DNA of 64,000 nt, taken from contig MCFE01000105.1 in assembly GCA_002104905.1 (NCBI GenBank), forward strand, positions 1 to 64,000, given 5' to 3'. The notes beneath the pieces were generated by a model that had not been told where the DNA came from, ran no database searches, and saw nothing but the letters and a program-made list of their open reading frames with translations. Position numbers and translations under genes: made by a program. Source of the DNA: Basidiobolus meristosporus CBS 931.73. Lineage: Eukaryota > Fungi > Basidiobolomycota. Shown in pieces: positions 1-13,190 of the stretch. Numbering within the stretch: the stretch's first letter is position 1; each line of letters opens with the position of its first letter.

Positions 1-47
1 CAATTGCATCTGCATTTTGCATCCACTAACACTGGCTCTGGCACTAG

Positions 48-1665
48 TTAATCAACCCCTTCAGAACTGGGAAAATCGTCATGTTCCAAGTCACTTACAA
101 CCATGAATGGCGCTTTTTCGAGATCATTTGCTTCTTCCTTATTGGTGCATTTGGGGTATTACTGAGTTACAGCGGATTCTTAGCGAAGCAGCCGTACTTA
201 CAACCATTACCCTCTAGGGACTCTTCGGAGCATTGTTCATCAAGTGTAACATTTGGTGGGCCAAGATCCGAGCAACCAAGCTCAAGAATTACCCCGTCCA
301 CGAGGTTCTGGCATTGGTTATGATCACCTCGATCGTTAGTTATTGGAATATCTTCACCAGGTAGAAGCATTCCGGATTCAGTATGCCCTTCCCATCAAAA
401 ATAACCATTTTCGTCGGCCTTTAGAATGGGTTCTGGTGAGCTGGTCACCAACTTGTTCAAGGAATGTCAAGATGAGCACCAGGGTGATTTGGAAGGGCTG
501 TGTGTGAACGAACCCGAACAATTTGGACCAGTCGTTGGAATGCTTCTGTATGCCATGCTTATCAAGATCGTGCTCACCATCTTTACATTTGGCTGTAGAG
601 TAAGTGGTCAGCATGCTGCACTTGTGGCAACCCTACTGACTCGAAAACCCAGGTTCCGTGCGGGATTTTCATTCCTTCCATGGTTGTAGGGGCATCCTTC
701 GGCCGAATTGTTGGACTCGGAGTCCAGTACCTTCAATTGTGAGTAGATTCTGCACCTTCAATGGTATTGCACCATCACTCACCCCCCATACAGGGTGTAT
801 CCAGATCTACCAGTATTCAGTTCATGCACCGATGCTGCCAACTGCATCAACCCGGGTGTCTACGCGATTATTGGAGCAGCAGCAGGCTTGGGTGGGGTTA
901 CTCGCATGACCGTCTCACTTATTGTCATTATGTTCGAGCTTACTGGCTCTCTCACCTACGTATTGGTAAGGCAAAGTCTCATGCTGGTGTCCCATGTAGC
1001 TGCTAACTCGCCTCTCTAGCCTTTGATGATCTCTATTCTGGTGGCCAAATGGACAGGCGATGCCCTGGTTCCAGGAAGTATTTACGACTGGCTGATTGAG
1101 GCCAACGGACACCCCTATCTTGACTCGAAAACGGAATACATTCATCTTGGCCAAACTAACGATATTACGGAGCATGACCTTCAGGTGATCGATGTGAACG
1201 AATCGAACACTGTGAGTGATCTCCGTAAGAAACTGGCCAAAATGGCCAACCATGGCTACCCGGATGGGGGTTTTCCTGTTCTCAATGGACAGCTTCTTAT
1301 TGGCTACATAGCTTGTAACGAACTGGAACATGCCTTGGACACACTCAATCCTGATGACGTCAACGCCCACTGTTATTTCAGCAAAACATTCGATGGCTAC
1401 GAGGATCATCTGGTGGATCTCACTGCCTACATGGATCAGGTAACTAACAACTTGCGTGACGTTCGATGGCAGCGCAGCTAATGCGACTGGTTTGTAGGCA
1501 CCATTGACCATCTCGGAGAATTCTTCCATGGAGCTAGTCTTGGAGCTCTTCTCCAAGCTCGGTGTTCGCTATGTCTGTGTCGTGTCTCATGGACAGTATG
1601 TAGGTATGATCCACAAGAAACGCCTGCTAGCCTATCTGAAGGAGTACGAGCAACAGCATCATTAG
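48..1665 (+). CDS. GEF1: CLC voltage-gated chloride channel/antiporter (Gef1/ClC-3-like), 3' part only; 5' end lies outside the window; multi-exon
   Basis: Spliced translation gives [35 protein letters not shown] (GIFIP signature), [29 protein letters not shown] and two C-terminal CBS-type domains. GT-AG introns include 156-217, 361-423 and 600-652. Stop TAG at 1663-1665. Confidence 0.93.
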
Positions 1666-1722
1666 CTTGATTAGAATAGCCTGCTATCCTACCTGAAAGA
1701 GTACCAGCAACTGCACCATTAG
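1623..1722 (+). repeat. 43-bp diverged tandem duplication of the CLC C-terminal codons and stop
   Basis: 1623-1665 versus 1680-1722 match at 37/43 positions; they read [13 protein letters not shown] and LLSYLKEYQQLHH*. Confidence 0.9.
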
Positions 1723-2174
1723 TCTAATTAATTTCTCAAAGCCCTTATGTAACATTATTGCCAATTTAAATATCTCCTATCTCGTCAATCACTGACTTAG
1801 AGTCTTCCAAAAATAAGTAAAATTAATTCAACAAAAAGGTGCGATTGATCCCATGTTTCCACAGAGTGTGCCAGGCTGTTGTCACCTTGCATTGCTCGTG
1901 ATCACCTATGCCTCCTGAATCTCTCCCTCAGATTGATCGATTAATCTGCAGACTGGTTTTTTCAGCACATGACTCATTCAATTCATAGTCAACACCTGCG
2001 TTGTCAGTCACAAGAAGCCACCATTATTTCTTTACCTGCCAGAGAAGTTCTACTGGTAAGCTCCTTCCCATTCAACCAGTTCCCTGCGAAGAACTAACCG
2101 CACGTAGAGCACCGAGTTTCTCCTTTCTGTATCTGTCGCCGTTGCTGACCCGAAGTCTTTGGAAGTCAATTTAC

Positions 2175-3746
2175 ATGGAACCTCTGTACAAAGAATACGT
2201 CCTTGGTCTCTCATACGCTTCTTACATTTTTGTTACTTATCTCAAGTAATCCAATGAAACCAGTTTTCTCTATTGCTGCCAAGTTCCACCCCCTAATCTG
2301 GGCCTTCTCTCCCCACGTATAGCTACCGTCAACTTCGAAAGCTCCATGAAGGCCGTCCGAAGATATTGACCAAACTGGTCACCCCTGAGGAGTTTGACCG
2401 CTTCACCGCCTACAGCATCGACAAAAGTAAATTCTTGTTCCTGGGAGATGCTTTTTCTCAACTACAGAACACCGCGGTAATCTACTTCAATTTGCTGGCC
2501 TGGCTTTGGAATGTGGCTGGTCGCTGGCTATCCTCTGCCGGCTATTCAGGTGGAAGTGAGGTATCGTCGTCTATCTGCTCTTCCTTCTTCTTACTGATGC
2601 TAAGCGTGCCTCATAGATCTCTCAGGGTGTAATCTTTTTCCTCTTGATATCCGTCATAAGCTCCATCACCGCCCTGCCCTTCAGCCTGTATAATACATTT
2701 GTCATAGAAGCCCGGCATGGGTCCAAAACACTGACGATAGGCTCGTTCTTCGTAAGCGGCATCAAAGGCTATTTATTTGGCGGTGCGGTCGGAGTCCCGT
2801 TAATTGCTACTTTCTTGTATATTGTTCAGTGGAGCGGCGACCGGTTCTACTTCTATGTTTGGATGTTTGCGTGAGTAGTGAGGATCCTCAATACTCCCAT
2901 CGAAGGCACCCGACTTACCGTTGCATTTCAGTTGTCTGTTTCAGTTGGTGATGGTCAGTTTATACCCGACTCTGATCCAGCCGTTGTTTCATGAGTGCAA
3001 GCCGTTGCAAGATGACGAGCTGAAGGGCCACATCGAGAATCTGGCTCGGCGGATTGGCTTTCCGCTGGGCAAGATCCACGTTGCGCCCTCTGATCCGAAC
3101 AAGCACACCAACCACGGGTACAGCTATTTCTTCGGCTTCTCGCCCAACAAGCACATAGCAATCTTCGAGAGCACTCTGAAAGACACCACCAGGGACGAGG
3201 TGTGCGCACTGCTGTGTAAGTGTCCACCCGTGCATTCCAGACGTAGCCCCACCCTAACCCTCACTAGGTCATGAGTTCGGCCACTGGAAATACAATCATG
3301 TGATGAAGCTGTTTATCATCCACCAAATCCATCTGTTTGGGATCTTCTACATCTTCAGCCATTTCATCAACCACTCGGGGTTGTATCGAGCGTTTGGGTT
3401 CGAGTCGAAGCCAGCGCTGGTCGGGTTCATGCTCTTCCAATACATCTTCTCCCCGTTCGAGGGGCTGGCGACCTTTCTGACGAACGCACTGTGCCGAAAG
3501 CAGGAGTTCCAAGCAGGTAATCCATCCACATATTTTCCCAAGCCTCCACAGTACTCCCCTAACCCATTTCCGGGCCAAGATGAATTCTCCAAGCGTCACG
3601 GATACGGCGAATCGCTGAGGGCCGGCCTGGTGCGACTGAACAAACAGGACTGCTCCAACCTGAACCTGGATAGCTGGTACTCGACATACCATTACTCGCA
3701 CCCGCCTCTGGTGGACCGATTGAAAGGCTTGGTGAAAACCGAATGA
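2175..3746 (+). CDS. STE24: Ste24/ZMPSTE24-like CAAX prenyl protease (peptidase M48), divergent paralogue; 6 exons
   Basis: Begins MEPLYKEYVLGLSYASYIF..YLNYRQ, then LPFSLYNTFVIE, LYPTLIQPLF, zinc motif HEFGH (across intron ~3216-3268), EFQAD and YHYSHPPLVDRL. Introns at ~2246-2312, 2561-2616, 2873-2930, ~3216-3268 and 3517-3579. Confidence 0.88.
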
Positions 3747-4201
3747 CCCGAATTCCCCGACTCTCTCTCTCGCTCTCTCTCCTTCTCTGATACCTGGCCT
3801 TGAACCGTAATCTATGCGTATGTTGTAATTGACGATGTAATGTGACATAGAATAAATCGCTCCAGCTAACAAGCCACCAGAGGGATGTTTCACAGATGCA
3901 TTCATTAAGTTTGAGATTGTGGTTGTGATCCAGATACACGACAAATATAGGGTAATTAGGCGGATGGATACGAACGTTTGGCTAGGAAATTTAAGGACTA
4001 GTTTGGTTCAATTTGTAGGATGTTCTTTAGGAACTTTCACCTCTATAAATGATCCGAATTAGGGTGTACGGTCGGTCGCTTTCTTTTTAAGTTATCTTTA
4101 ATTTGGTTGCAAAGCGAGGACTACTTGACACTCCGTCTCTCGTCCCTTCCCTTCCCTCCGAATACCTGCAACCGAGCTCACTTCGCAGAAGGTGCGAGTC
4201 C

Positions 4202-5199
4202 ATGAACCACTCCATTTCCCCACAGTCTCCCCTATCCTATACCTCGTGTATGGGTTCGAAAACGAGCGGCTCTCAGGTGGGGTTCGGCTCAAACAGAGAG
4301 ATAAAGCTCGACCCAAGAAAGTCCGCCAGGAAGCCTGTGACTGTGGTATACCAAAGAGGAATATCTCCTCCGTCTGCACCACCTTTACTCATTCCCGTTT
4401 GACTTCTTAATGCAGCCGAAAATGAAGAACCTATATCGAGTGTTCTCCGTGTTAGAGGTGGACGATAGTTCTCTGTATATCCTGGTGTGGCCGTAACATT
4501 GACCTTGATACCTTTTCCAGGAAGAATCCCGTCCTTCAGAGAAGGAGATAGCCCACGAACAGCAGGTGACCCACTTGTTGAGAAACGAGCCAGACCCCAC
4601 ATTGAATGATAGAATGGAAGCAGAATTGGATGCAGTGGCTGGAGCTGGGACTTCAGGGGTAAGTGGAAGAGTATGCTGATTGAGGGAGAGCTGGACAACT
4701 TACCATGGTATGGCAGTTTTGGGAAATATCGATGTTCAATCCGCTCTCCAGTCCAACCTATCTTCCTTCACGACTCAACCCCGAGAGCGAGGTAAGCCCA
4801 CGGCTGGCCATATTTCATTGCTTGATTCTGACGGATACCAGTATTTTTACCACGATACGAGCACCTATCCTTCCCCCACATCGTCGTCCACCTCCGTGTC
4901 ATCCAACGCAAACCCCCTTGGTGCAGGTCATAGAAGTCCAGCTAGCCTGCGTGGTAAGCGAAAACGTACGTAGACGTTCGGTGATACCCTACTTCTCGAG
5001 CTAGCTTGTACTAAATCGGATCTCCAAAGTGCTAGAGGAAAGGTTCGAGCCATACTCGAGCATGAAACGACGTGCTCTGTCCCCGACCGCCAACAGCCCT
5101 TCGCCTACCAACGCCGCAGCTAGAATCCACATCAGGACAAACTCCCTAATTAATATTCAATACACCAGCGCGTCTTTCAGCCAGCTAAGCTTGTCTTAG
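4202..5199 (+). CDS. Hypothetical ~230-aa Ser/Pro-rich protein with FAM122/PABIR-like motifs; 6 exons; start uncertain
   Basis: Five 50-70 nt GT-AG introns (4346-4415, 4458-4520, 4659-4716, 4792-4841, 4966-5029) join into one open frame: ..RKPVTV/PKMKNLYRVFSVLE/EESRPSEKEIAHEQQV..GKRK/LLEERFEPYSSMKRRALSP..QLSLS*. The ORF track does not show it as a single ORF. Confidence 0.72.
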
Positions 5200-5419
5200 G
5201 CAATTGGCCATCTGTTCCCTGTATAGCCCTTCATGAATGAATAGATCGACGGGATTTTTATTCGGTTTAACCCAGCATCAGTCTGGGCATGCATATATAC
5301 AAGCAGGATTGCGTGGCTTAGAATCTCGCAAACGACCACTCTATCTGTTTTGAAATGCGTAGAGGAGTCAAGTGGCGCGAATTGGATCCTTGATCACTCT
5401 AACGCTGTCAACTCCTGTA

Positions 5420-8400
5420 TCATTCTTCTTCGTCCTCCTCCTCCTCCTCTTCCTCTTCGTCGTTGTCGATGTCAAAGACACATATGTCTTTTTGCTCAGA
5501 AGAGAGTACGCCGATGATTCTTCGCGACTCTCTGCCGTTGGTGACGATCCCATTTGCCTGATTCACCTTGAGATTCCTCGCTCGCTCGGTGGTGAAACGA
5601 GTTGGATGGATTTTCATCTAGGTCGAAATAAGTCAATAAAGCAGCACTCACCCAAGTAACCACTATGCACACTCACTTTACAAAGCTCCAGTATCGAGGA
5701 GTCTTCGAACGAAGCGGTTCCAGTCGTGTAGTCTAGTTCTCGGAACTCAACAAGCTCCAGGTAACATGCTGGTTGCTCTGCAGACCATTCCATCGGACCG
5801 TTAGGAGGGGCATACAAGGGGGGCGGAAGCTACGAGGCTGCTTACCGTTCTCGTCTCTTCTCTGCATCAGAACCGCCAGTGATTGATCATCAAAGAACTC
5901 CATATCAAGCAGCGTGGCCCCTGGCTCTTCTATCGATAGACCAACAAAATCACTGCGTTGCGTCGATTCAGTGGATAGCTTTGTTCGTACGATCCAGACT
6001 GGTGGCCAGGGATTAGAACTCGCTTCACGCCCAGATTCAGCAAGGTTACTTACTTGTAGGCTTGCATTCATTCTCATTACTGCCGGGCAATGAGTGGAGC
6101 GCAAGATATTCATATGTGGCCTTTTCCTAAATATGCTCGTGAGTGGGCGGCACTTCGCAAGAACACAACCGTGCATACCTCGTGGACTCCCCTGGAGGCC
6201 ATGAGTAAATGGCCTTGTTTGCCAAACTCTGTGGCGCAACAGAAATCGACGCACTGGGATTGAAGTAAAGTAAATCGGCTCTGCTGGAATGTATCTCCGA
6301 TCAGCTTGGCGGGGACATCCAGTAGTTGTTTACAGCGACCATCCAGCACTTGGAAGAGGTCACGGACACTGACGAAGCGCAGGTCACAATCGCTCAGTAT
6401 CTCCTTCGGGAAGGTGAAACTGTGCGGGTATAAGCAACTTGCCCTTTTCGTATTGTTGCGCTTCTCTAGCTCCTCCAGGTACCGGGCCATGCTGTTTTGG
6501 CTCATTTTGGAGAAAAAGCCAGCCAGGCAGTCGTTGGTTAACGAGGTTTGCAGAAATTCGGCCACCTTCAGGATGTCCACGGGTTGATACCTTATTGGGA
6601 CCGGCTCTTCAGTGGGCATGATTTTCTGTAATACTACGAAGCAAGATCAACCAGCTGCCCTGGTCTAGGCAAACCATTTCGAACTAGCCGTACCATTTTG
6701 CAACCATTTCGTGAAATTCAGGAATTTCTTCAGTTCCGCATCAATCGTCAGCAACAGCTCCTCCAATCTACCGACAAAGTTGCCCACGAGCATGACACAC
6801 GAATGCACCGTTTCTTCATGCAGTCCAATGCTGGTATATCGCTCCTCCCTGGTATAAATGGAGGTTGATGAGCAACGGCACACTGGCAGGCGTTGGCGAC
6901 GAAACAAACCATCTACTCAGCCCCGCTATCTCATCTAGGTATAGGATCAGTCGGATACAAGCAGGCTGTACATATTCATGTGCAAAGCTACGGATGCCAA
7001 TGAACCCGTTTTCTGTGGTTTTCTCCCACTTTCTTAGCCCCTAAAGCGACAAGGTTACCAAAGAACCACGAAACGGCCATTCGAAGAGTAGTTACCTTTT
7101 CCGTTAGATCTTGTTGCATAAATTGATTGAGACAAACGCTCGGTGATCCTTTTGCCAGCATGTTGGCGAACTCGGCGACTGGGTTGGAGTCCACTGAGGC
7201 ACAGGAAGTCTGTTAGAACCCTCGCATTTAAACAGTACCCAGCCTTTCTAACCTCCTTGGTCTATCAGTATCTGTTCCAAACGTTCCAAATGTTTCTTGG
7301 ATAGATTGGTGACTCCGAGGTACTCCTCCTCCATTCCCTTGATGCTCTGCTGGATGTAGTTGAGAAGAAAGCTCACCTTTGTCGATATCGAAGAAAGCGA
7401 CCGAATCTCCCTCTTTCTCGAGTGTAGTAATCCGGTGTCGAAGGAGATGGAGAAGGAGCAACCAAGTTTGGAATCGCCGTTGGGGTCGGACAAGCTTGAG
7501 TATACCAGAGTGAAGACAGACAGGTCGTGGGAAGCGCAGCCTTCAATTGCTCTAAATTTCTGAGAGCGTGGTGAGTGGAAGCCACCGAGAGAAACAAACC
7601 GTCGAATACCTTAGCTTCGGGAACCGCGTATTTCTCGGTGGACTTGGACCCAAGGTCGAACACGCCATACACACTAGATAGGATTGGTTTGTTTAGCCAC
7701 AAGAACCATGCTCCATAACCAACCGTCCGTACCTCGTGTAGATATTTCCGAAATCATCTGCTGCTATCAGCAAGTTTATGGTGTCGCTGTCTTTCTCGGA
7801 TTCATCGAACATATCCAGCGCCGTGTCTTTTGGTTTCGTAGCAAATATGCTACCACTAAAAGGCCATTATTTGAGCCATAGGCGCAGTTAACACTGTTCA
7901 GTATGATCGAACCTGGATCTGTTGTGGGGGATAGCGCTAAGTTGCGGCAAATGCTTCACGATGTGCGAGTGGCTATTGATGGAACTCTGCAAAAGAAGTG
8001 GTTGTTGATGGCAGTCCTCAGGCTCGCTTTTCTTCGTACACTTACCTGATTCCCCTGAGCATTTCCCGCTTCTTCAGCCCAATACAAAAAGGAAATGGGG
8101 TTTTTGGCCGCTTCCGAGTTTGAAAGCTGTATCTTGTGGAGGATTTGCGCTGAGCTCACGTCGTAGAGCGACACCGTGCAGTTCGGATAACCAACGGCCA
8201 GGACCTTCCCTAATACCAGGATTGTTGTTAAACCATGGCTCGTCGTTCAATCTACGCCAAGAGCGCAAGGAGAAAGACCTACCGTCAGGTCTCCAGGTCA
8301 ATGCAGTTGGTTTGCTTTCTCCGGTGTGCGATACAGACCAAACTTTTTGCCACGACAAGCGCCACAAGGAAAGCTCGCCAGTATATGTTATGAGAGCAAT

Positions 8401-8496
8401 CAAATCCATGGTCGGGCACCATGAATAAAAGCACACCGCCTCGGGGAGTCTCTTCTGACCAAGTGGAGTGAAGGTTTTCTCGGCATCGGGCACCAT
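5420..8496 (-). CDS. APC4: Anaphase-promoting complex subunit 4; multi-exon
   Basis: N-terminus SWCPTMDLIAL..LSLWRLSWQKVW..LTWRPDG matches the ANAPC4 WD40 start. A helical middle follows, and the C-terminus NGRESRRIIGVLS..VFDID ends in an acidic tail. Confidence 0.88.
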
Positions 8497-8802
8497 GTTG
8501 AGTCTACTGAAGAAGTGACGAAACAAGACTCACTTTTTGCACGGTGAGCAGACACCCAACTTGTTTATTATTGTCCTATAAACAACTGTTTATTTGGAAT
8601 CAGAATTCACGGAGTATTTCTTGACATCACCCGCACTCAAGAATGGCGGGTAGAGTATTCCGAAATGCTATCCTCGTGATCCTGAGGGATCTCCAGTCAC
8701 CAGTGGCTAATGCAAATTAGTAGTAGCGCAACCATGAGTACGTAGCTACCAGTGCTTAAATTTAACATACGCTTCACGTAGTGGAATAATAAGGTTTTCT
8801 AA

Positions 8803-10376
8803 ATGAACAAAATCAACCATGAGGCTCTGCTCACTATAGAGCAACCATTCGTAAAAGTAACTCGTAGTTGCCAAGCATCTCTTGTCCCAGTGGTTAATCT
8901 CTCTCCACCCAGGTACCATACGAACAATTGAAGAAAGCCTTCAGGGTTTCTCAGAAGCACATTGAAAAGGAGATCACAGTGCTTACTCATTCCGTTGGGG
9001 ATCTTTTGAAAGCTGCCAACCAGGGTAAGGTCAATGCTGACGAGGCTGTCAAAGTAATCGACAACTCTATCCAGAGGCTGAAAACCTTGAAGCAGAAGGT
9101 ACCCTTTTCCGCGGGATTTAAGTCACCAGAGTCAACCTACTCACCCGAACCTTGCTTGTAGCTTCAAGATGCAAAACAGGAAGAGCTTCTCTTCACAAAA
9201 AGAAGCAAAGCTCGTTTGCAACACCTTTCGGAGCTGAACCAGATTGTGTCCTATAACGACGAGGCGTACACGCGTTGGAGTAGAGTCCGATTAGATCGTG
9301 TCCTGGTCGACTTCATGCTACGTTCAGGTTTTAGCGAAACCGCCAAGGCGCTGGCCAAAGATACAAACATCGAGGTTCCGTTTATTCAATCCCCCCTGGG
9401 TCCTGGCCACCTCGCTAACTCCATAGTCGAATCATACAGGAACTTGTGGATACCGAACTGTTCATCCAGTCCAAGAAGATCGAGGAAGCGCTACAAAAGC
9501 ACAGTTGCACAGAATGCCTGCACTGGTGTAGTGAGAACAAGACGAGCCTGCGTAAGATGAAGGTAGTGTGATGCTAGCGCTAGGCTGGTCCATCCATCTT
9601 TCTAACCGGGCTGAATTAGAGCACGCTGGAGTTCAATCTCAGACTTCAAGAGTTCATTGAGTTGGTTAGAGCACGAAGAACCAGCGAAGCTATCTCGTAT
9701 GCACGCAAGCATCTCATTCAATGGACCGATGCCAATATCAAAGAGATCCAACAAGCGATGGCACTTCTGGCCTTCAAGCCAGACACCAAATGCCAGCCCT
9801 ACAAAGTAAGTATGGCATCGTATGGGTCCGACTGGGAAACAATCTCGCTTACATCCCGACCTCCACTCCTCAGAAACTCTTCGACGAGAACCGGTGGGTC
9901 CATCTCGTGGAGCAGTTCCGCAACGACAATTTCAGCCTTCATAGCCTGACTTCGGAGCCTTTGCTCTCGGTCACTCTACAAACCGGTCTATCTGCGTTGA
10001 AGACGCCCATGTGCTACCAGCATGAAAATCGCAACATCAACTGCCCAGTGTGCGCCCCCGACACACTAGGTGTGCTTGCACAGAAGCTACCCCTATCACA
10101 TCATGTAAATTCCACCATCGTATGCAGAATCTCCGGGGAGATCATGAACGAAAACAACCCGCCCATGATGCTTCCCAACGGATACGTCTACTCCTTCAAT
10201 GTAAGTTCGTCTAGGTCCGTCGAAAGCAGCGTCCGACCAACTAACCCCTCTCTCTCTCTCTCCACATTGCACAGGCCCTCAAAGATATGGCGGCCAAGAA
10301 CCAAGGCAAAGTCAAATGTCCACGCACCAACGATACCTACGAGTTCTCCGAGCTTAAGAAGCTCTTCTTGACTTAG
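8803..10376 (+). CDS. FYV10: GID/CTLH E3 ligase subunit FYV10/GID9 (MAEA); multi-exon
   Basis: EQPFVK/VPYEQLKKAFRVSQKHIEKE, LisH (RLDRVLVDFMLRSG), CTLH (LEFNLRLQEFIELVR), CRA, and degenerate RING (LPLSHHVNSTIVCRISGEIMNENNPPMMLPNGYVYS..CPRT). Confidence 0.93.
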
Positions 10377-10547
10377 CGTACTGATCCACCTGACCGACTT
10401 ATTTGTATAATATATTAATATCGATGTTTATTAAAAAATGGGCCATTCAAACCAAACCAAACCAAACGTCATGGTTTCCAGTTGATCTGATGCGGAGAGG
10501 TAAACAAGCCGACTGGAAAAAAAAAATATGGACCAGGTGGGCGGGGT

Positions 10548-10553
10548 CACGTG
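10548..10553. promoter_or_regulatory. CACGTG E-box next to a GC-box-like word upstream of CCT7
   Basis: GGGCGGGGTCACGTG lies ~180 bp upstream of the CCT7 ATG. Motif match only. Confidence 0.3.
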
Positions 10554-10734
10554 AAGATCCTTCGGCGAGCTTCCTTGGCCACCGAGAAAATCTGATCCCC
10601 CCCCCCCAGGAAGGGATTTTTCTCGGCCAGTGTAGCAAAAGCTATTCGAGTATTCCAAGAGGTGCTTATCCGACTTGATTTTCAAGAGACACTTGCCTAC
10701 AACCGACTGTGCATTTCTTGTTTCTATCACCAAG

Positions 10735-12836
10735 ATGGCTTCCCCCGCTTCCATGATGGTATGTCTATATTCTTCAGCAGCTCAATACCTCTCGACCCAC
10801 CACCACCACCACCTTCCCCTTCCCCTCCCCCATCCACCGCAACCTCCTTTGCCGTGCGTACCCTCGTCCACCTGGCCATCCTGATCCACCCACTGAGTAA
10901 CACAAAGATCCACTAACTGACTTTGTCTTTCCCGTAGCAACCTCAAATCATCCTTCTCAAAGAGGGTACCGATTCTTCCCAAGGCAAGGGCCAACTCCTG
11001 TCCAACATCAACGCCTGCCTTGCGGTGTGCGACACCGTTCGCACCACCCTCGGCCCCCGTGGCATGGACAAGTTGATCGTCAACCAAAGAGGTGAGTGAC
11101 CTTTCTTCAGGAGCCACCTACCCAGGCTCGTCTAGATTAACCGGTTGCTTTGCAGGCGACGTCACCATCTCCAACGACGGTGCCACCATCATGAAGCTTT
11201 TGGACATCGTCCAACCCGCCGCCAAGACCTTGGTGGACATCGCCAGGTCTCAGGATGCCGAGGTAAGGCTTGCAGGTTTTGTGCCCCGACCCCCGGGTGG
11301 ATAGCTAACGTTTGCCTCAGGTCGGTGACGGCACCACCAGTGTGGTCCTCCTTGCCGGAGAGTTCCTGAAGGAGGTCAAATCCTACATCGAAGAAGGGGT
11401 CAGCTCCCAAGTGATCATCAAGGGTTTCCGTAAGGCCGCACAACTCGTAAGCTGAACGGGAGCATTTCTGTTCCGGGACGGACCGTACCAACCAACCACC
11501 ATCTATTTTTAGGCCATCAACAAAGTCAAGGAGATCTCAGTCACCGTCGACAGAACCAACGAGGAGTAAGTGGCTTCCCCACACACGGAACCCCCCTGTC
11601 CGCCCCTTGGCTAACCCTCCACCCCACAGAGAGTTCAGATCCCTCCTCGAGAAGTGTGCCGCCACCGCCATGTCCTCCAAGCTGATCCACTCCCACAAGG
11701 ATTTCTTCACCAAGATGGTGGTCGACTCCGTTCTTCACCTGGACCAAGAAGACCTCAACCCCAAACTCATCGGGATCAAGAAGGTCCCAGGCGGCGCCAT
11801 GGAGGACTCCCTCTTCGTCGACGGGGTGGCCTTCAAGAAGACCTTCTCCTACGCCGGTTTCGAGCAACAGCCCAAGCACTTCAAGCAGCCCAAGATCCTG
11901 TGCCTGAACGTTGAGCTGGAGCTCAAGGCCGAGAAGGACAACGCCGAGGTCCGGGTCGAGGCGGTGGACGAGTACCAATCGATCGTCGATGCCGAATGGT
12001 CCATCATCTACCAGAAGCTCGAGGCGATCGTCAAGACCGGAGCCAAGGTGGTCCTCTCCAAGCTCCCCATCGGGGACCTTGCCACCCAGTACTTCGCCGA
12101 CCGCGATATCTTCTGTGCCGGCCGCGTCGCCGCCGACGACCTCAGCCGTGTTGTGAAGGCGGTCGGTGGCTCCGTCCAATCCACATGCACCGACATCTCC
12201 GAGAAGCACCTGGGCACCTGTGAGGTGTTCGAGGAGAAGCAGATCGGTGGGGAGAGATTCAACCTGTTCAGCGGCTGCCCCGCCGCCAAGACATGCACGC
12301 TGATCCTTCGTGGTGGCGCCGAGCAATTCATCGCCGAGGTGGAGAGAAGCCTGAACGACGCCATCATGATCGTCAGAAGGGCCATCCGCAACAACCACGT
12401 GGTGGCCGGTGGTGGCGCCACCGAGATGGAGCTTTCCAAGTACCTCCGTCTCCACGCCCGAACCATCCAGGGCAAGCAGCAGCTGATCATCTCCGCCTTC
12501 GCCAAGGCCTTGGAGGTCATCCCCCGCCAGCTGTGCGACAACGCCGGGTTCGACTCCACCGAGATCCTCACCAAACTCCGTCAGAAGCACACCCAGGGCG
12601 GAACCTGGTTCGGCGTGGATATCAACAACGAGACCATCACCGACAACTTCGACGCTTTCGTCTGGGAGCCTTCCCTCGTCAAGATCAACGCCATCTCCGC
12701 CGCCGCCGAGGCTGCCTGCTTGATCCTGTCCGTTGACGAGACCGTCAAGAATCCCCAGAGCCAGCAAGCCCCTCAGGGACCTCCAGGAGGCGGTATGGGC
12801 ATGCCAGGCCGCGGTCGTGGCATCCCACGTCGCTAA
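10735..12836 (+). CDS. CCT7: T-complex protein 1 subunit eta (CCT7); 6 exons
   Basis: [58 protein letters not shown] and a Gly/Met/Arg-rich tail. All 5 introns fall before ~11630. Confidence 0.96.
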
Positions 12837-13190
12837 GCGAACCGGATCACCCCCGGGAATGTCGGTATGTGCCGGGCCACGCTCGAGCCCAATCCCAATC
12901 CCACACCCAACCATCCCCCCACTGTCCCGCAACCCCCTAACCCTCTTGCTTCCCTTTTATTTCCGGGTTGATTTTTCTCTCGCCTCTTACATGATTCTCC
13001 GCCACGAAACCATGGACGACTTCGTTGTAACATTACTTTAGAAACCATGTTATTGTCATTGCCATTGTCATCGCAACTAATAAAAGTCCCAGCAAGATAG
13101 TGTCGGGCGGATGGTTTGGTTTATTGGTCGAGTGGATATCAGAGCCATACAAGTACATGTTAAATGAATGGGTGGGTGGTGAAGGTTGGG

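What the first reader, a model, noticed from the sequence alone, without database searches (positions are those of the whole stretch)
4202..5199. Unannotated spliced gene encoding a possible fungal FAM122/PABIR-like PP2A-B55 regulator
Seen: five canonical short introns join a ~230-aa, mostly disordered, SP-rich protein with two motif blocks, RVFSVLEEE-x6-EIAHEQQV and GKRKLLEERFEPYSSMKRRALSP. Known (from memory): human FAM122A, a competitive inhibitor of PP2A-B55, has RLHQIKQEE-x7-ETVHEREV as its B55-binding helices and a later LKRK..E.EY.PKR segment. Both blocks occur here in the same order with near-identical spacing. An upstream in-frame LRRRCES resembles FAM122A LRRSNS if the gene starts earlier. 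Inference: this may be a fungal FAM122 homologue acting on Cdc55/Pab1-type PP2A, which I do not know to have been described.
Basis: partly seen in the sequence, partly recalled or inferred. Interest (0 to 1): 0.7.

Follow-up and report, generated by a model that had tools for sequence, protein, structure and literature searches.

The report
Fungal FAM122-like candidate PP2A-B55 regulator
A real six-exon gene of the fungus Basidiobolus meristosporus encodes a disordered nuclear protein whose only folded element resembles the two helices that animal FAM122A uses to block the phosphatase PP2A-B55, but kinship with FAM122 is suggested, not proven.

Summary
Exons 4202-4345, 4416-4457, 4521-4658, 4717-4791, 4842-4965 and 5030-5199 (+) join through five GT-AG introns of 50-70 nt into a 230-aa ORF carrying both motif blocks.

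The window is the start of B. meristosporus CBS 931.73 contig MCFE01000105.1. The gene is not unannotated: GenBank has K493DRAFT_335971 (172 aa). That model uses other splice sites and loses the conserved C-terminus.

The protein belongs to an unnamed family with no Pfam hit. Members occur in Basidiobolus, Glomeromycotina, Mucorales, Umbelopsis, Endogonales and Syncephalis, plus one lichen ascomycete.

In the helix module, only one Arg in helix 1 and two Glu (i, i+4) in helix 2 are invariant. These match FAM122A R84, E100 and E104. AlphaFold2 predicts disorder apart from a helix-turn-helix over this module. A protein-language-model search puts FAM122A/PABIR_N clusters first.

Against this, HMMER profiles do not reach the FAM122A chain in the PDB. 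Module similarity beats shuffles only for Basidiobolus. The second block looks like an hnRNP-M-type PY nuclear import signal, not a FAM122 feature.

Verdict: a plausible FAM122-like PP2A-B55 inhibitor, about 50% likely. Family membership is unproven.

The parts
4202..4345 (+). Exon 1 (48 aa, poorly conserved, S/P-rich). It ends in ..ARKPVTV, which together with exon 2 rebuilds the family motif [RK][RK]xx[LIV][LV]-PKxKx[LF]xR[VI].
   Evidence: First in-frame ATG. The GTATAC donor sits at the position homologous to the B. ranarum donor. The junction motif matches RRSSLL-PKSKAL of Mucorales. Only 45% nucleotide identity to B. ranarum. The start is unverified.
4416..4457 (+). Exon 2 (14 aa, PKMKNLYRVFSVLE). 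It carries most of helix 1, with the invariant Arg at 4437-4439 and Val at 4440-4442.
   Evidence: 81% nucleotide identity to B. ranarum. Arg is invariant in 50 family members. The helix is predicted in the orthologue.
4521..4658 (+). Exon 3 (46 aa). It holds the acidic end of helix 1 (EE, 4521-4526), the turn SRPS, and helix 2 EKEIAHEQQV (4539-4568), with the two invariant Glu at 4545-4547 and 4557-4559. An acidic variable tail follows.
   Evidence: The intron 2 position is conserved in the orthologue and the paralogue.
4717..4791 (+). Exon 4 (25 aa). It holds the near-invariant Trp (4720-4722) and the invariant S-[KR]-L-N-P-E block (4768-4785).
   Evidence: 73% nucleotide identity to B. ranarum. 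S, L, N, P and E are invariant in alignments A4 and A5. This settles the frame against the alternative unspliced ORF 4680-4973.
4842..4965 (+). Exon 5 (41 codons plus 1 base). It holds the PSPTSS Ser/Pro cluster, HRSP, and the invariant KRK (4956-4964).
   Evidence: The phase-1 intron after KRK is conserved in all three Basidiobolus loci.
5030..5199 (+). Exon 6 (56 aa plus stop). It holds R-FE-PY (5041-5055) and KRRALSP (5065-5085), which with KRK form a basic PY-NLS-like signal. The conserved C-terminal NAAAR..SLINIQ..SFSQLSLS lies at 5110-5196.
   Evidence: 81% protein identity to B. ranarum. The block is conserved across the family. The only PDB match of the block is the hnRNP M PY-NLS peptide 2ot8_C. 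Pfam HnRNP_M_NLS matches 4 of 15 members weakly. The deposited model reads this exon in another frame.
4181..4201 (+). In-frame upstream LRRRCES, outside the ATG-initiated ORF. It could be coding only if an unseen 5' exon or a non-ATG start exists.
   Evidence: ORF table. The B. ranarum paralogues carry LRRLSRIKS and YRRSRTKS in exon 1, but the DNA alignment does not place them opposite this stretch.

Best explanation
The locus is a real six-exon gene of Basidiobolus meristosporus. It encodes a 230-aa, almost wholly disordered, Ser/Pro-rich nuclear protein.

Its one structured element is a helix-turn-helix. Helix 1 (R-V-x-x-V-L-E-E-E) carries an invariant Arg, a following hydrophobic residue and an acidic pair. 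After a short Pro-containing turn, helix 2 carries two invariant Glu four residues apart.

I propose that it acts like animal FAM122A/PABIR1. Helix 1 would dock on the conserved platform of the B55 (Cdc55/Pab1) subunit. Helix 2 would lie across the PP2A catalytic site, with its two Glu facing the substrate-binding arginines. This would make the protein a stoichiometric inhibitor of PP2A-B55.

The KRK...R-FE-PY...KRR block most likely drives nuclear import through the transportin/Kap104 pathway. The flanking RRxS and SP sites offer kinase control.

Shown here: the gene structure, conservation across early-diverging fungi, the predicted helices, the pattern of invariant residues, and the nearest named family by language-model features. 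Inferred only: binding to B55, inhibition, and common descent with FAM122.
For: - Gene model: five introns at identical positions and phases in the window gene, its paralogue and the B. ranarum orthologue. Exons are far more conserved than introns.
- Family: 60+ proteins, all 'hypothetical' and without Pfam domains, from Basidiobolus, Glomeromycotina, Mucorales, Umbelopsis, Endogonales and Syncephalis, plus one named ascomycete.
- Invariant residues: in the helix module of 50 members these are only the helix-1 Arg and the two Glu of helix 2 (A4 and A5).
- Match to FAM122A: R84 salt-bridges B55 D197, E91/E92 bind B55, and E100/E104 bind the PP2Ac arginines. Mutating E100/E104 abolishes inhibition.
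- Spacing: Arg to first Glu is 15 residues in the fungi, 16 in human, and 15 in the OCR-read C. elegans line.
- Basidiobolus REMAHEHEV compares with frog and fish RETAHEREV.
- AlphaFold2: P0121 is disordered except H78-92 and H96-115 (pLDDT 75-88), which lie exactly on the module. The Mucorales member has its only confident helix at 144-183, on the same module.
- ESM Atlas features: for P0121 the three best clusters are FAM122A-like/PABIR_N (0.89, 0.88 and 0.83; 189, 186 and 157 of 256 shared features). For the Mucorales member P0139, FAM122A-like is again the best named family (0.84, 182 shared).
- Pairwise module score of B. ranarum against the human peptide: z 3.4, p 0.004 against shuffles.
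- Collinear weaker parallels with the animal alignment: a basic RRxS patch upstream, a W-E-acidic motif after helix 2, a PSPT cluster, and RSP..KRK followed by acidic residues.
Against: - No HMMER link. Profiles A3 and A4 give no hit to FAM122A chain 8so0_D at E<=10, although that chain is in the library.
- A module-only HMM scores the human peptide at 2.2 bits, and 12.6% of shuffles do as well.
- Pairwise similarity is not significant for Glomeromycotina, Mucorales, Endogonales or the ascomycete.
- I88 and K89 of the FAM122A motif have no conserved counterpart. The hydrophobic residue sits one position later.
- R105 and V107 are not conserved outside Basidiobolus.
- The FAM122A second element KQCFSP with Ser158-Pro is absent. 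The fungi have S[KR]LNPE instead.
- The Atlas scores are below 0.9, which the tool calls a lead only. Fungal clusters in the Atlas carry no PABIR_N annotation.
- Foldseek finds nothing.
- No complex model and no RNA evidence could be obtained.
Confidence: 0.5

Rival explanations
1. A conserved fungal nuclear disordered protein with no link to PP2A. The helix module would bind another partner, for example a transcription, chromatin or RNA factor. The likeness to FAM122 would be convergent or compositional: an acidic amphipathic helix in an S/P-rich protein that also has a basic import signal.
For: No profile-level link to FAM122A. Module similarity is significant only for Basidiobolus. Block 2 is explained by a PY-NLS. 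Atlas scores under 0.9 are leads only, and a third of shuffled proteins get a first hit of 0.8 or more. The same first-stage scan also proposed another PP2A-B55 analogy in this genome that ended without statistical support.
Against: The invariant residues of the module are exactly those that matter in FAM122A. The spacing and the helix-turn-helix match.
Confidence: 0.33
2. A PP2A-B55 substrate or adaptor rather than an inhibitor. Helix 1 would recruit B55, as in p107 or Eya3, so that nearby SP/TP or RRxS phosphosites of this protein or of a bound partner are dephosphorylated. Helix 2 would not block the active site.
For: B55 binds many unrelated helices through the same platform. The published substrate motif [RK]-V-x-x-[VI]-R is nearly met by R-V-F-S-V-L. 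The protein is rich in SP and TP sites.
Against: The two Glu of helix 2 are invariant, which is not expected if only helix 1 matters. The turn length is held to within one residue of FAM122.
Confidence: 0.12
3. Not a real gene, or a wrongly spliced model. The motifs would be artefacts of joining chance ORFs.
For: No RNA run could be listed. The intron 2 donor GTGGAC is weak. The deposited model differs.
Against: Exon-specific conservation. Identical intron positions and phases in three loci. Both junction-spanning motifs are conserved in more than 50 proteins of other fungi.
Confidence: 0.02

Closest known systems
FAM122A / PABIR1 (animal PP2A-B55 inhibitor; Pfam PF27638 PABIR_N; structure 8SO0)
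   Same: Both are disordered, S/P-rich proteins of about 230-290 aa. Both have a helix-turn-helix with Arg plus a hydrophobic residue plus an acidic pair in helix 1, and Glu-x3-Glu in helix 2 at the same distance. Both have a basic RRxS patch upstream and a Trp-acidic motif, a PSPT cluster and KRK downstream. FAM122A is the nearest named family by language-model features.
   Different: There is no HMMER or fold statistic linking them. No conserved counterpart exists for I88, K89, R105 or V107. The KQCFSP/Ser158 element is absent. The fungal family has its own invariant S[KR]LNPE, RFEPY and C-terminal SxMSLS motifs. The literature places FAM122 'first in Bilateria'.
hnRNP M PY-NLS (Karyopherin beta2/transportin signal, PDB 2OT8; Pfam PF11532)
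   Same: The core R-F-E-P-Y followed by K-R a few residues later is identical. A basic patch (KRK) lies upstream, as in basic PY-NLS signals (R-x2-5-P-Y consensus, from established knowledge). It is the only PDB match of the block, with weak Pfam matches in 4 of 15 members.
   Different: The match covers a short motif only (E 1.2 and 0.025). The rest of the protein is unrelated to hnRNP M, and import by Kap104 is untested.
ENSA/ARPP19/Igo1 (endosulfine PP2A-B55 inhibitors present in fungi)
   Same: Small disordered proteins that bind B55 through a helix and reach the PP2Ac active site.
   Different: No Endosulfine Pfam hit. No FDSGDY Greatwall site. Inhibition by ENSA needs a phosphoserine in the active site, whereas here two Glu would take that place, as in FAM122A.
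Spo12 family (proposed fungal stoichiometric PP2A-B55 inhibitors, bioRxiv 10.1101/2025.10.28.685054)
   Same: A fungal disordered protein proposed to inhibit PP2A-Pab1/Cdc55 under Cdk control. The authors themselves suggest that FAM122A may be functionally akin.
   Different: No Spo12 Pfam domain hit. Different conserved motifs. Spo12 depends on a phospho-Ser in its SPO12 domain.
IER5 / SERTA helical hairpins (B55 adaptors)
   Same: A helix-loop-helix docking on the same B55 platform. A separate Basidiobolus gene of this kind was noted elsewhere in this scan.
   Different: The sequence pattern is different. IER5 occludes the B55 surface but has no acidic helix reaching the catalytic site.

Membership tests
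FAM122/PABIR | Significant sequence or profile match to FAM122 proteins or to Pfam PF27638 (PABIR_N) | tested here: not met
   Fungal profiles A3 and A4 give no hit to 8so0_D at E<=10, although the chain is in the library. The module HMM gives 2.2 bits, and 12.6% of shuffles score as well. PF27638 is absent from the local Pfam copy, so it could not be scanned directly. The Atlas lists the fungal look-alike clusters with no common Pfam family.
FAM122/PABIR | B55-binding helix R-L-x-x-I-K-x-E-E (R84, L85, I88, K89, E91, E92) | tested here: inconclusive
   The Arg is invariant, the next residue is V/I in nearly all members, and the acidic pair is kept as E/D. I88 and K89 have no conserved counterpart: the window has V and L, Mucorales have Q and A.
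FAM122/PABIR | Inhibition helix with Glu100 and Glu104 after a short turn | tested here: met
   Two Glu spaced i/i+4 are invariant in 50 members and lie 15 residues after the Arg, against 16 in human. A helix is predicted over them. R105 and V107 are matched only in part and only in Basidiobolus.
FAM122/PABIR | Second binding element, residues 154-159 KQCFSP with Ser158-Pro | tested here: not met
   The fungal family has an invariant S-[KR]-L-N-P-E about 51 residues after the second Glu, a similar distance, but no Ser-Pro and no convincing alignment.
FAM122/PABIR | N-terminal LRRSNS-type basophilic phosphosite | tested here: inconclusive
   RRSS or RRAS directly upstream of helix 1 in Mucoromycota. 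The window protein has RKPVTV there. LRRRCES at 4181-4201 lies outside the ATG-initiated ORF.
FAM122/PABIR | Binds and inhibits the PP2A-B55 holoenzyme | not testable with these tools
   No multimer prediction or bench assay is available here.
FAM122/PABIR | Nearest family in an unbiased whole-database comparison | tested here: met
   In the ESM Atlas feature search, FAM122A-like/PABIR_N clusters rank 1-3 for P0121 and are the best named family for P0139. The scores of 0.84-0.89 are below the tool's 0.9 line, so this is a lead and not proof.
PY-NLS (transportin/Kap104 cargo signal) | Basic or hydrophobic N-terminal patch followed by R/K/H-x2-5-P-Y in a disordered region | tested here: met
   KRK-x4-R-F-E-P-Y is near-invariant and lies in a region of low pLDDT. 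The only PDB match is the hnRNP M NLS 2ot8_C. Pfam HnRNP_M_NLS matches 4 of 15 members. Karyopherin binding was not tested.
Spo12 family | SPO12 domain (Pfam Spo12) | tested here: not met
   No Pfam hit at E<=10 for the exons, P0121 or P0122, and none at E<=1 for seven other members.
Endosulfine (ENSA/ARPP19/Igo) | Endosulfine domain with the FDSGDY Greatwall site | tested here: not met
   No Pfam hit. The motif is absent from the translated model and from P0121.

The most novel reading that the evidence does not exclude
This unnamed fungal family is the true orthologue of animal FAM122/PABIR. The constitutive helix-based inhibitor of PP2A-B55 would then date back to the common ancestor of fungi and animals, not to Bilateria as published. 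It would have been kept in early-diverging fungi and some Pezizomycotina, and lost or changed beyond recognition in the model yeasts. In the fungal form it is coupled to a PY-type nuclear import signal.
Probability: 0.4. Interest if true: 0.75.

Novelty: new variant of a known kind. Interest (0 to 1): 0.6.

Why it matters
Three kinds of regulator bear on fungal PP2A-B55 in the papers read here: the Greatwall-Igo/ENSA route, Zds1 as a yeast B55 binder, and a recent proposal for Spo12. FAM122A acts before ENSA and needs no phosphorylation to bind. It is described as a bilaterian invention.

A fungal counterpart would change the picture of how the Cdk/PP2A-B55 switch evolved. It would point to a missing regulator in Mucorales, which include human pathogens, and in arbuscular mycorrhizal fungi. 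It would also give a natural set of divergent sequences showing which residues of the two helices are truly required.

Even if kinship fails, the work defines a conserved, unnamed fungal protein family with clear motifs. It also corrects a deposited gene model.

Tried and rejected
- My first splice guess used a 19-nt 'intron' at 4397-4415. It was rejected as too short. The homologous donor at 4346 fits the orthologue and restores a family motif.
- The alternative unspliced ORF 4680-4973 was rejected because the W...S[KR]LNPE frame is the conserved one.
- Pfam scans of all exons and of nine family members found nothing meaningful.
- PDB phmmer and hmmsearch with exons, P0193:400-465, A3 and A4 gave no FAM122A hit.
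It reached only Basidiobolus, plus two repeat proteins that I set aside as spurious.
- The word-index searches with A3 and A5 found fungi only. They could not be expected to reach animal FAM122, which shares no 5-residue words.
- Foldseek of the mostly disordered model found nothing.
- No RNA-seq run was listed.
- Spo12 and endosulfine membership were rejected.
- Genome contigs holds bacteria and archaea only, and the one attempt failed on query length.
- The joined spliced protein of the window was translated only inside local scripts to read frames. It was not sent to any search or folding tool. Searches were done exon by exon by reference, and with the natural annotated orthologue P0121 in its place.
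- Animal FAM122 full-length sequences could not be obtained under a reference. No profile-profile comparison of the two families was therefore run. Only the 28-residue human peptide given in PMC10765524 and confirmed in 8so0_D was used.

Full report
**What is there.** I read the region and rebuilt the splice model locally.

The exons are 4202-4345, 4416-4457, 4521-4658, 4717-4791, 4842-4965 and 5030-5199 on the + strand. They give a 693-nt CDS of 230 codons plus a stop. The five GT-AG introns measure 70, 63, 58, 50 and 64 nt, with phases 0,0,0,0,1.

RVFSVLE|EE-SRPSEK-EIAHEQQV crosses the exon 2/3 junction. GKRK-L|LEERFEPYSSMKRRALSP crosses the exon 5/6 junction.

My first guess for intron 1 was 4397-4415, only 19 nt, which is too short. 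The donor GTATAC at 4346 is the one that is homologous in the orthologue.

**Where the window comes from.** A neighbouring CCT7 exon pointed to Basidiobolus. Window bases 1-11123 are identical to B. meristosporus CBS 931.73 contig MCFE01000105.1.

The gene is therefore annotated in GenBank as K493DRAFT_335971 (P0126, 172 aa, 4422-5123). That model starts at the Met of MKNLYRV. It uses a donor at 4485, which inserts nine residues between the two helices, and a last acceptor near 5006, which shifts the frame after KRK.

The syntenic B. ranarum locus has the gene order Ste24 protease, target, APC4, CTLH, CCT7. It carries a 248-aa annotated orthologue, P0121. B. meristosporus also has a paralogue, P0122, on another contig.

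All three genes have introns at the same five positions with the same phases. Against B. ranarum, exons 2-6 are 53-81% identical, whereas introns and flanks are 29-42% identical.

The deposited frame is not.

Exon 1 is weakly conserved. Its end and the start of exon 2 rebuild a family motif: RKPVTV-PKMKNL in the window against RRSSLL-PKSKAL in Mucorales.

No RNA run could be listed, so there is no transcript evidence.

**The family.** Pfam finds nothing in the exons or in relatives.

It reached only Basidiobolus.

Word-index searches with full-length alignments recovered about 60 proteins. They come from Glomeromycotina, Mucorales, Umbelopsis, Endogonales and Syncephalis. There are also two 690-aa proteins: one from the lichen ascomycete Mycoblastus, and one near-identical unnamed metagenome-derived sequence. 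All are 'hypothetical' and none has a Pfam domain.

The conserved blocks, in order:
- a basic RRxS-LLPKxK patch
- helix 1: R-[VI]-x4-x-[ED]-[ED]
- a short turn, often containing Pro
- helix 2: E-x3-E
- a near-invariant Trp
- an invariant S-[KR]-L-N-P-E
- a PSPT cluster
- KRK-x4-R-F-E-P-Y-x3-5-K-R-R-A-x-S-P
- a C-terminal NAAAR...N[IL]Q...SxMSLS

Across 50 members with a complete module, the only residues kept in at least 95% of them are the helix-1 Arg and the two helix-2 Glu.

**Comparison with FAM122A.** The cryo-EM paper (PMC10765524) gives 84-RLHQIKQEE-92 as the B55-binding helix.
- R84 salt-bridges B55 D197.
- L85 and I88 sit in hydrophobic pockets.
- E91 stabilises the helix through R84, and E92 binds a deep basic pocket of B55.

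It gives 97-INRETVHEREVQTAM-111 as the inhibition helix, with E100 and E104 on the PP2Ac arginines. Mutating E100 and E104 abolishes inhibition (PMC11233601).

The invariant fungal residues coincide with R84, E100 and E104, and the acidic pair coincides with E91/E92. The Arg-to-Glu distance is 15 residues in the fungi and 16 in human. In the OCR-read supplementary alignment it is 15 in C. elegans.

Basidiobolus REMAHEHEV is close to the frog and fish RETAHEREV.

AlphaFold2 with the family alignment predicts the orthologue as disordered (mean pLDDT 52.6), except for helices 78-92 and 96-115 with pLDDT 75-88. These lie on the module, with the break at Y-P-S. A Mucorales member has its only confident element, helix 144-183, on the same module.

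An unbiased language-model search of the ESM Atlas gave FAM122A-like/PABIR_N clusters as hits 1-3 for P0121 (0.89, 0.88 and 0.83; 189, 186 and 157 of 256 shared features). For the roughly 30%-identical Mucorales member P0139, FAM122A-like was again the best named family (0.84, 182 shared). It ranked behind three unnamed Ascomycota and Basidiomycota clusters.

**What speaks against membership.**
- The FAM122A chain 8so0_D is in the PDB library, yet fungal profiles do not reach it at E<=10.
- A module-only HMM scores the human peptide at 2.2 bits, and 12.6% of composition-matched shuffles do as well.
- Pairwise global scores beat shuffles for B. ranarum (z 3.4, p 0.004) and for the B. meristosporus paralogue (p 0.03). 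They do not for the other clades.
- I88, K89, R105 and V107 lack conserved counterparts.
- The recently described second element KQCFSP with Ser158 (PMC13041800; human residues 74-174) is not present. The invariant S[KR]LNPE lies at a similar distance but has no Ser-Pro.
- Foldseek finds nothing, as expected for such a model.

The only PDB match of the KRK...KRR block is the hnRNP M PY-NLS peptide bound to karyopherin beta2 (2ot8_C). There GNRFEPYaNPTKR aligns with eDRFEPY.snlKR at E 1.2. Pfam HnRNP_M_NLS matches 4 of 15 members, with a best E of 0.025.

A basic patch followed by R-x2-P-Y in a disordered region fits the established PY-NLS rule. I read this block as a nuclear import signal, not as a FAM122-specific element. 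FAM122A has KRK plus acidic residues there, but no P-Y.

**Literature.** The papers I could search describe FAM122 as 'first found in Bilateria' and as conserved in bilaterian animals. Searches for FAM122A or PABIR together with fungi, yeast or Cdc55 found no fungal homologue.

A 2025 preprint proposes Spo12 as a fungal stoichiometric PP2A inhibitor. It states that Spo12 has no sequence similarity to FAM122A. The present family has no Spo12 or endosulfine domain.

The functional reading is a FAM122-like inhibitor of PP2A-B55, imported into the nucleus by a PY-NLS. It is the best available explanation at about 50%.

Formal membership of the FAM122/PABIR family is not shown. One defining test (profile match) failed and one feature (the Ser158 element) is absent. 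I therefore file it as a new variant of a known kind, not as a member.

The joined spliced protein of the window was used only inside local scripts and was sent to no search tool.

Noticed in passing
window 4422-5123 (GenBank model K493DRAFT_335971 = P0126): The deposited gene model keeps 27 nt of intron 2, inserting VDDSSLYIL between the two helices. It also uses a last acceptor near 5006 that shifts the frame. The product therefore lacks the RFEPY/KRRALSP and C-terminal motifs found in every complete relative.
   Followed up: yes
L004:4001-4913 (B. meristosporus contig MCFE01000011.1) and P0125 (B. ranarum): Both Basidiobolus species carry two paralogues of this gene. The B. ranarum second copy (P0125) also has a model that breaks off after KRK.
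   Followed up: partly
P0143, P0185, P0189 (Mucor-like proteins, alignment A4 columns about 370-392): Several Mucor models run on into junk (VSFG.IKFFLK...) exactly between RRSSLL and PKSK. This is the position of intron 1 in Basidiobolus. It suggests an ancient intron at that site that is retained in these gene models.
   Followed up: no
L001 against window 1-12900: B. meristosporus has a second CCT7 copy, 95% identical over the 92% of the long exon that aligns, on contig MCFE01000613.1. A CLC channel gene lies upstream of it, but the Ste24, target, APC4 and CTLH genes are missing. This looks like a segmental duplication with loss or rearrangement.
   Followed up: no
window 3300-3746 (+), 5420-8496 (-), 8803-10376 (+), 10735-12836 (+): The neighbours are ordinary housekeeping genes: a Ste24-type M48 CAAX protease, APC4, a CTLH-domain protein and CCT7. 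The gene order is conserved in B. ranarum.
   Followed up: partly
ESM Atlas clusters: Unnamed clusters from Ascomycota (about 215 aa) and Basidiomycota (about 432 and 764 aa) are the nearest look-alikes of the Mucorales member. The family may therefore be wider in Dikarya than the single named ascomycete hit (Mycoblastus) shows.
   Followed up: no
same genome, another piece (scan note s1-194682): Another Basidiobolus gene was flagged earlier in this scan as an IER5/SERTA-like candidate B55 adaptor. It likewise lacked statistical support for family membership.
   Followed up: no
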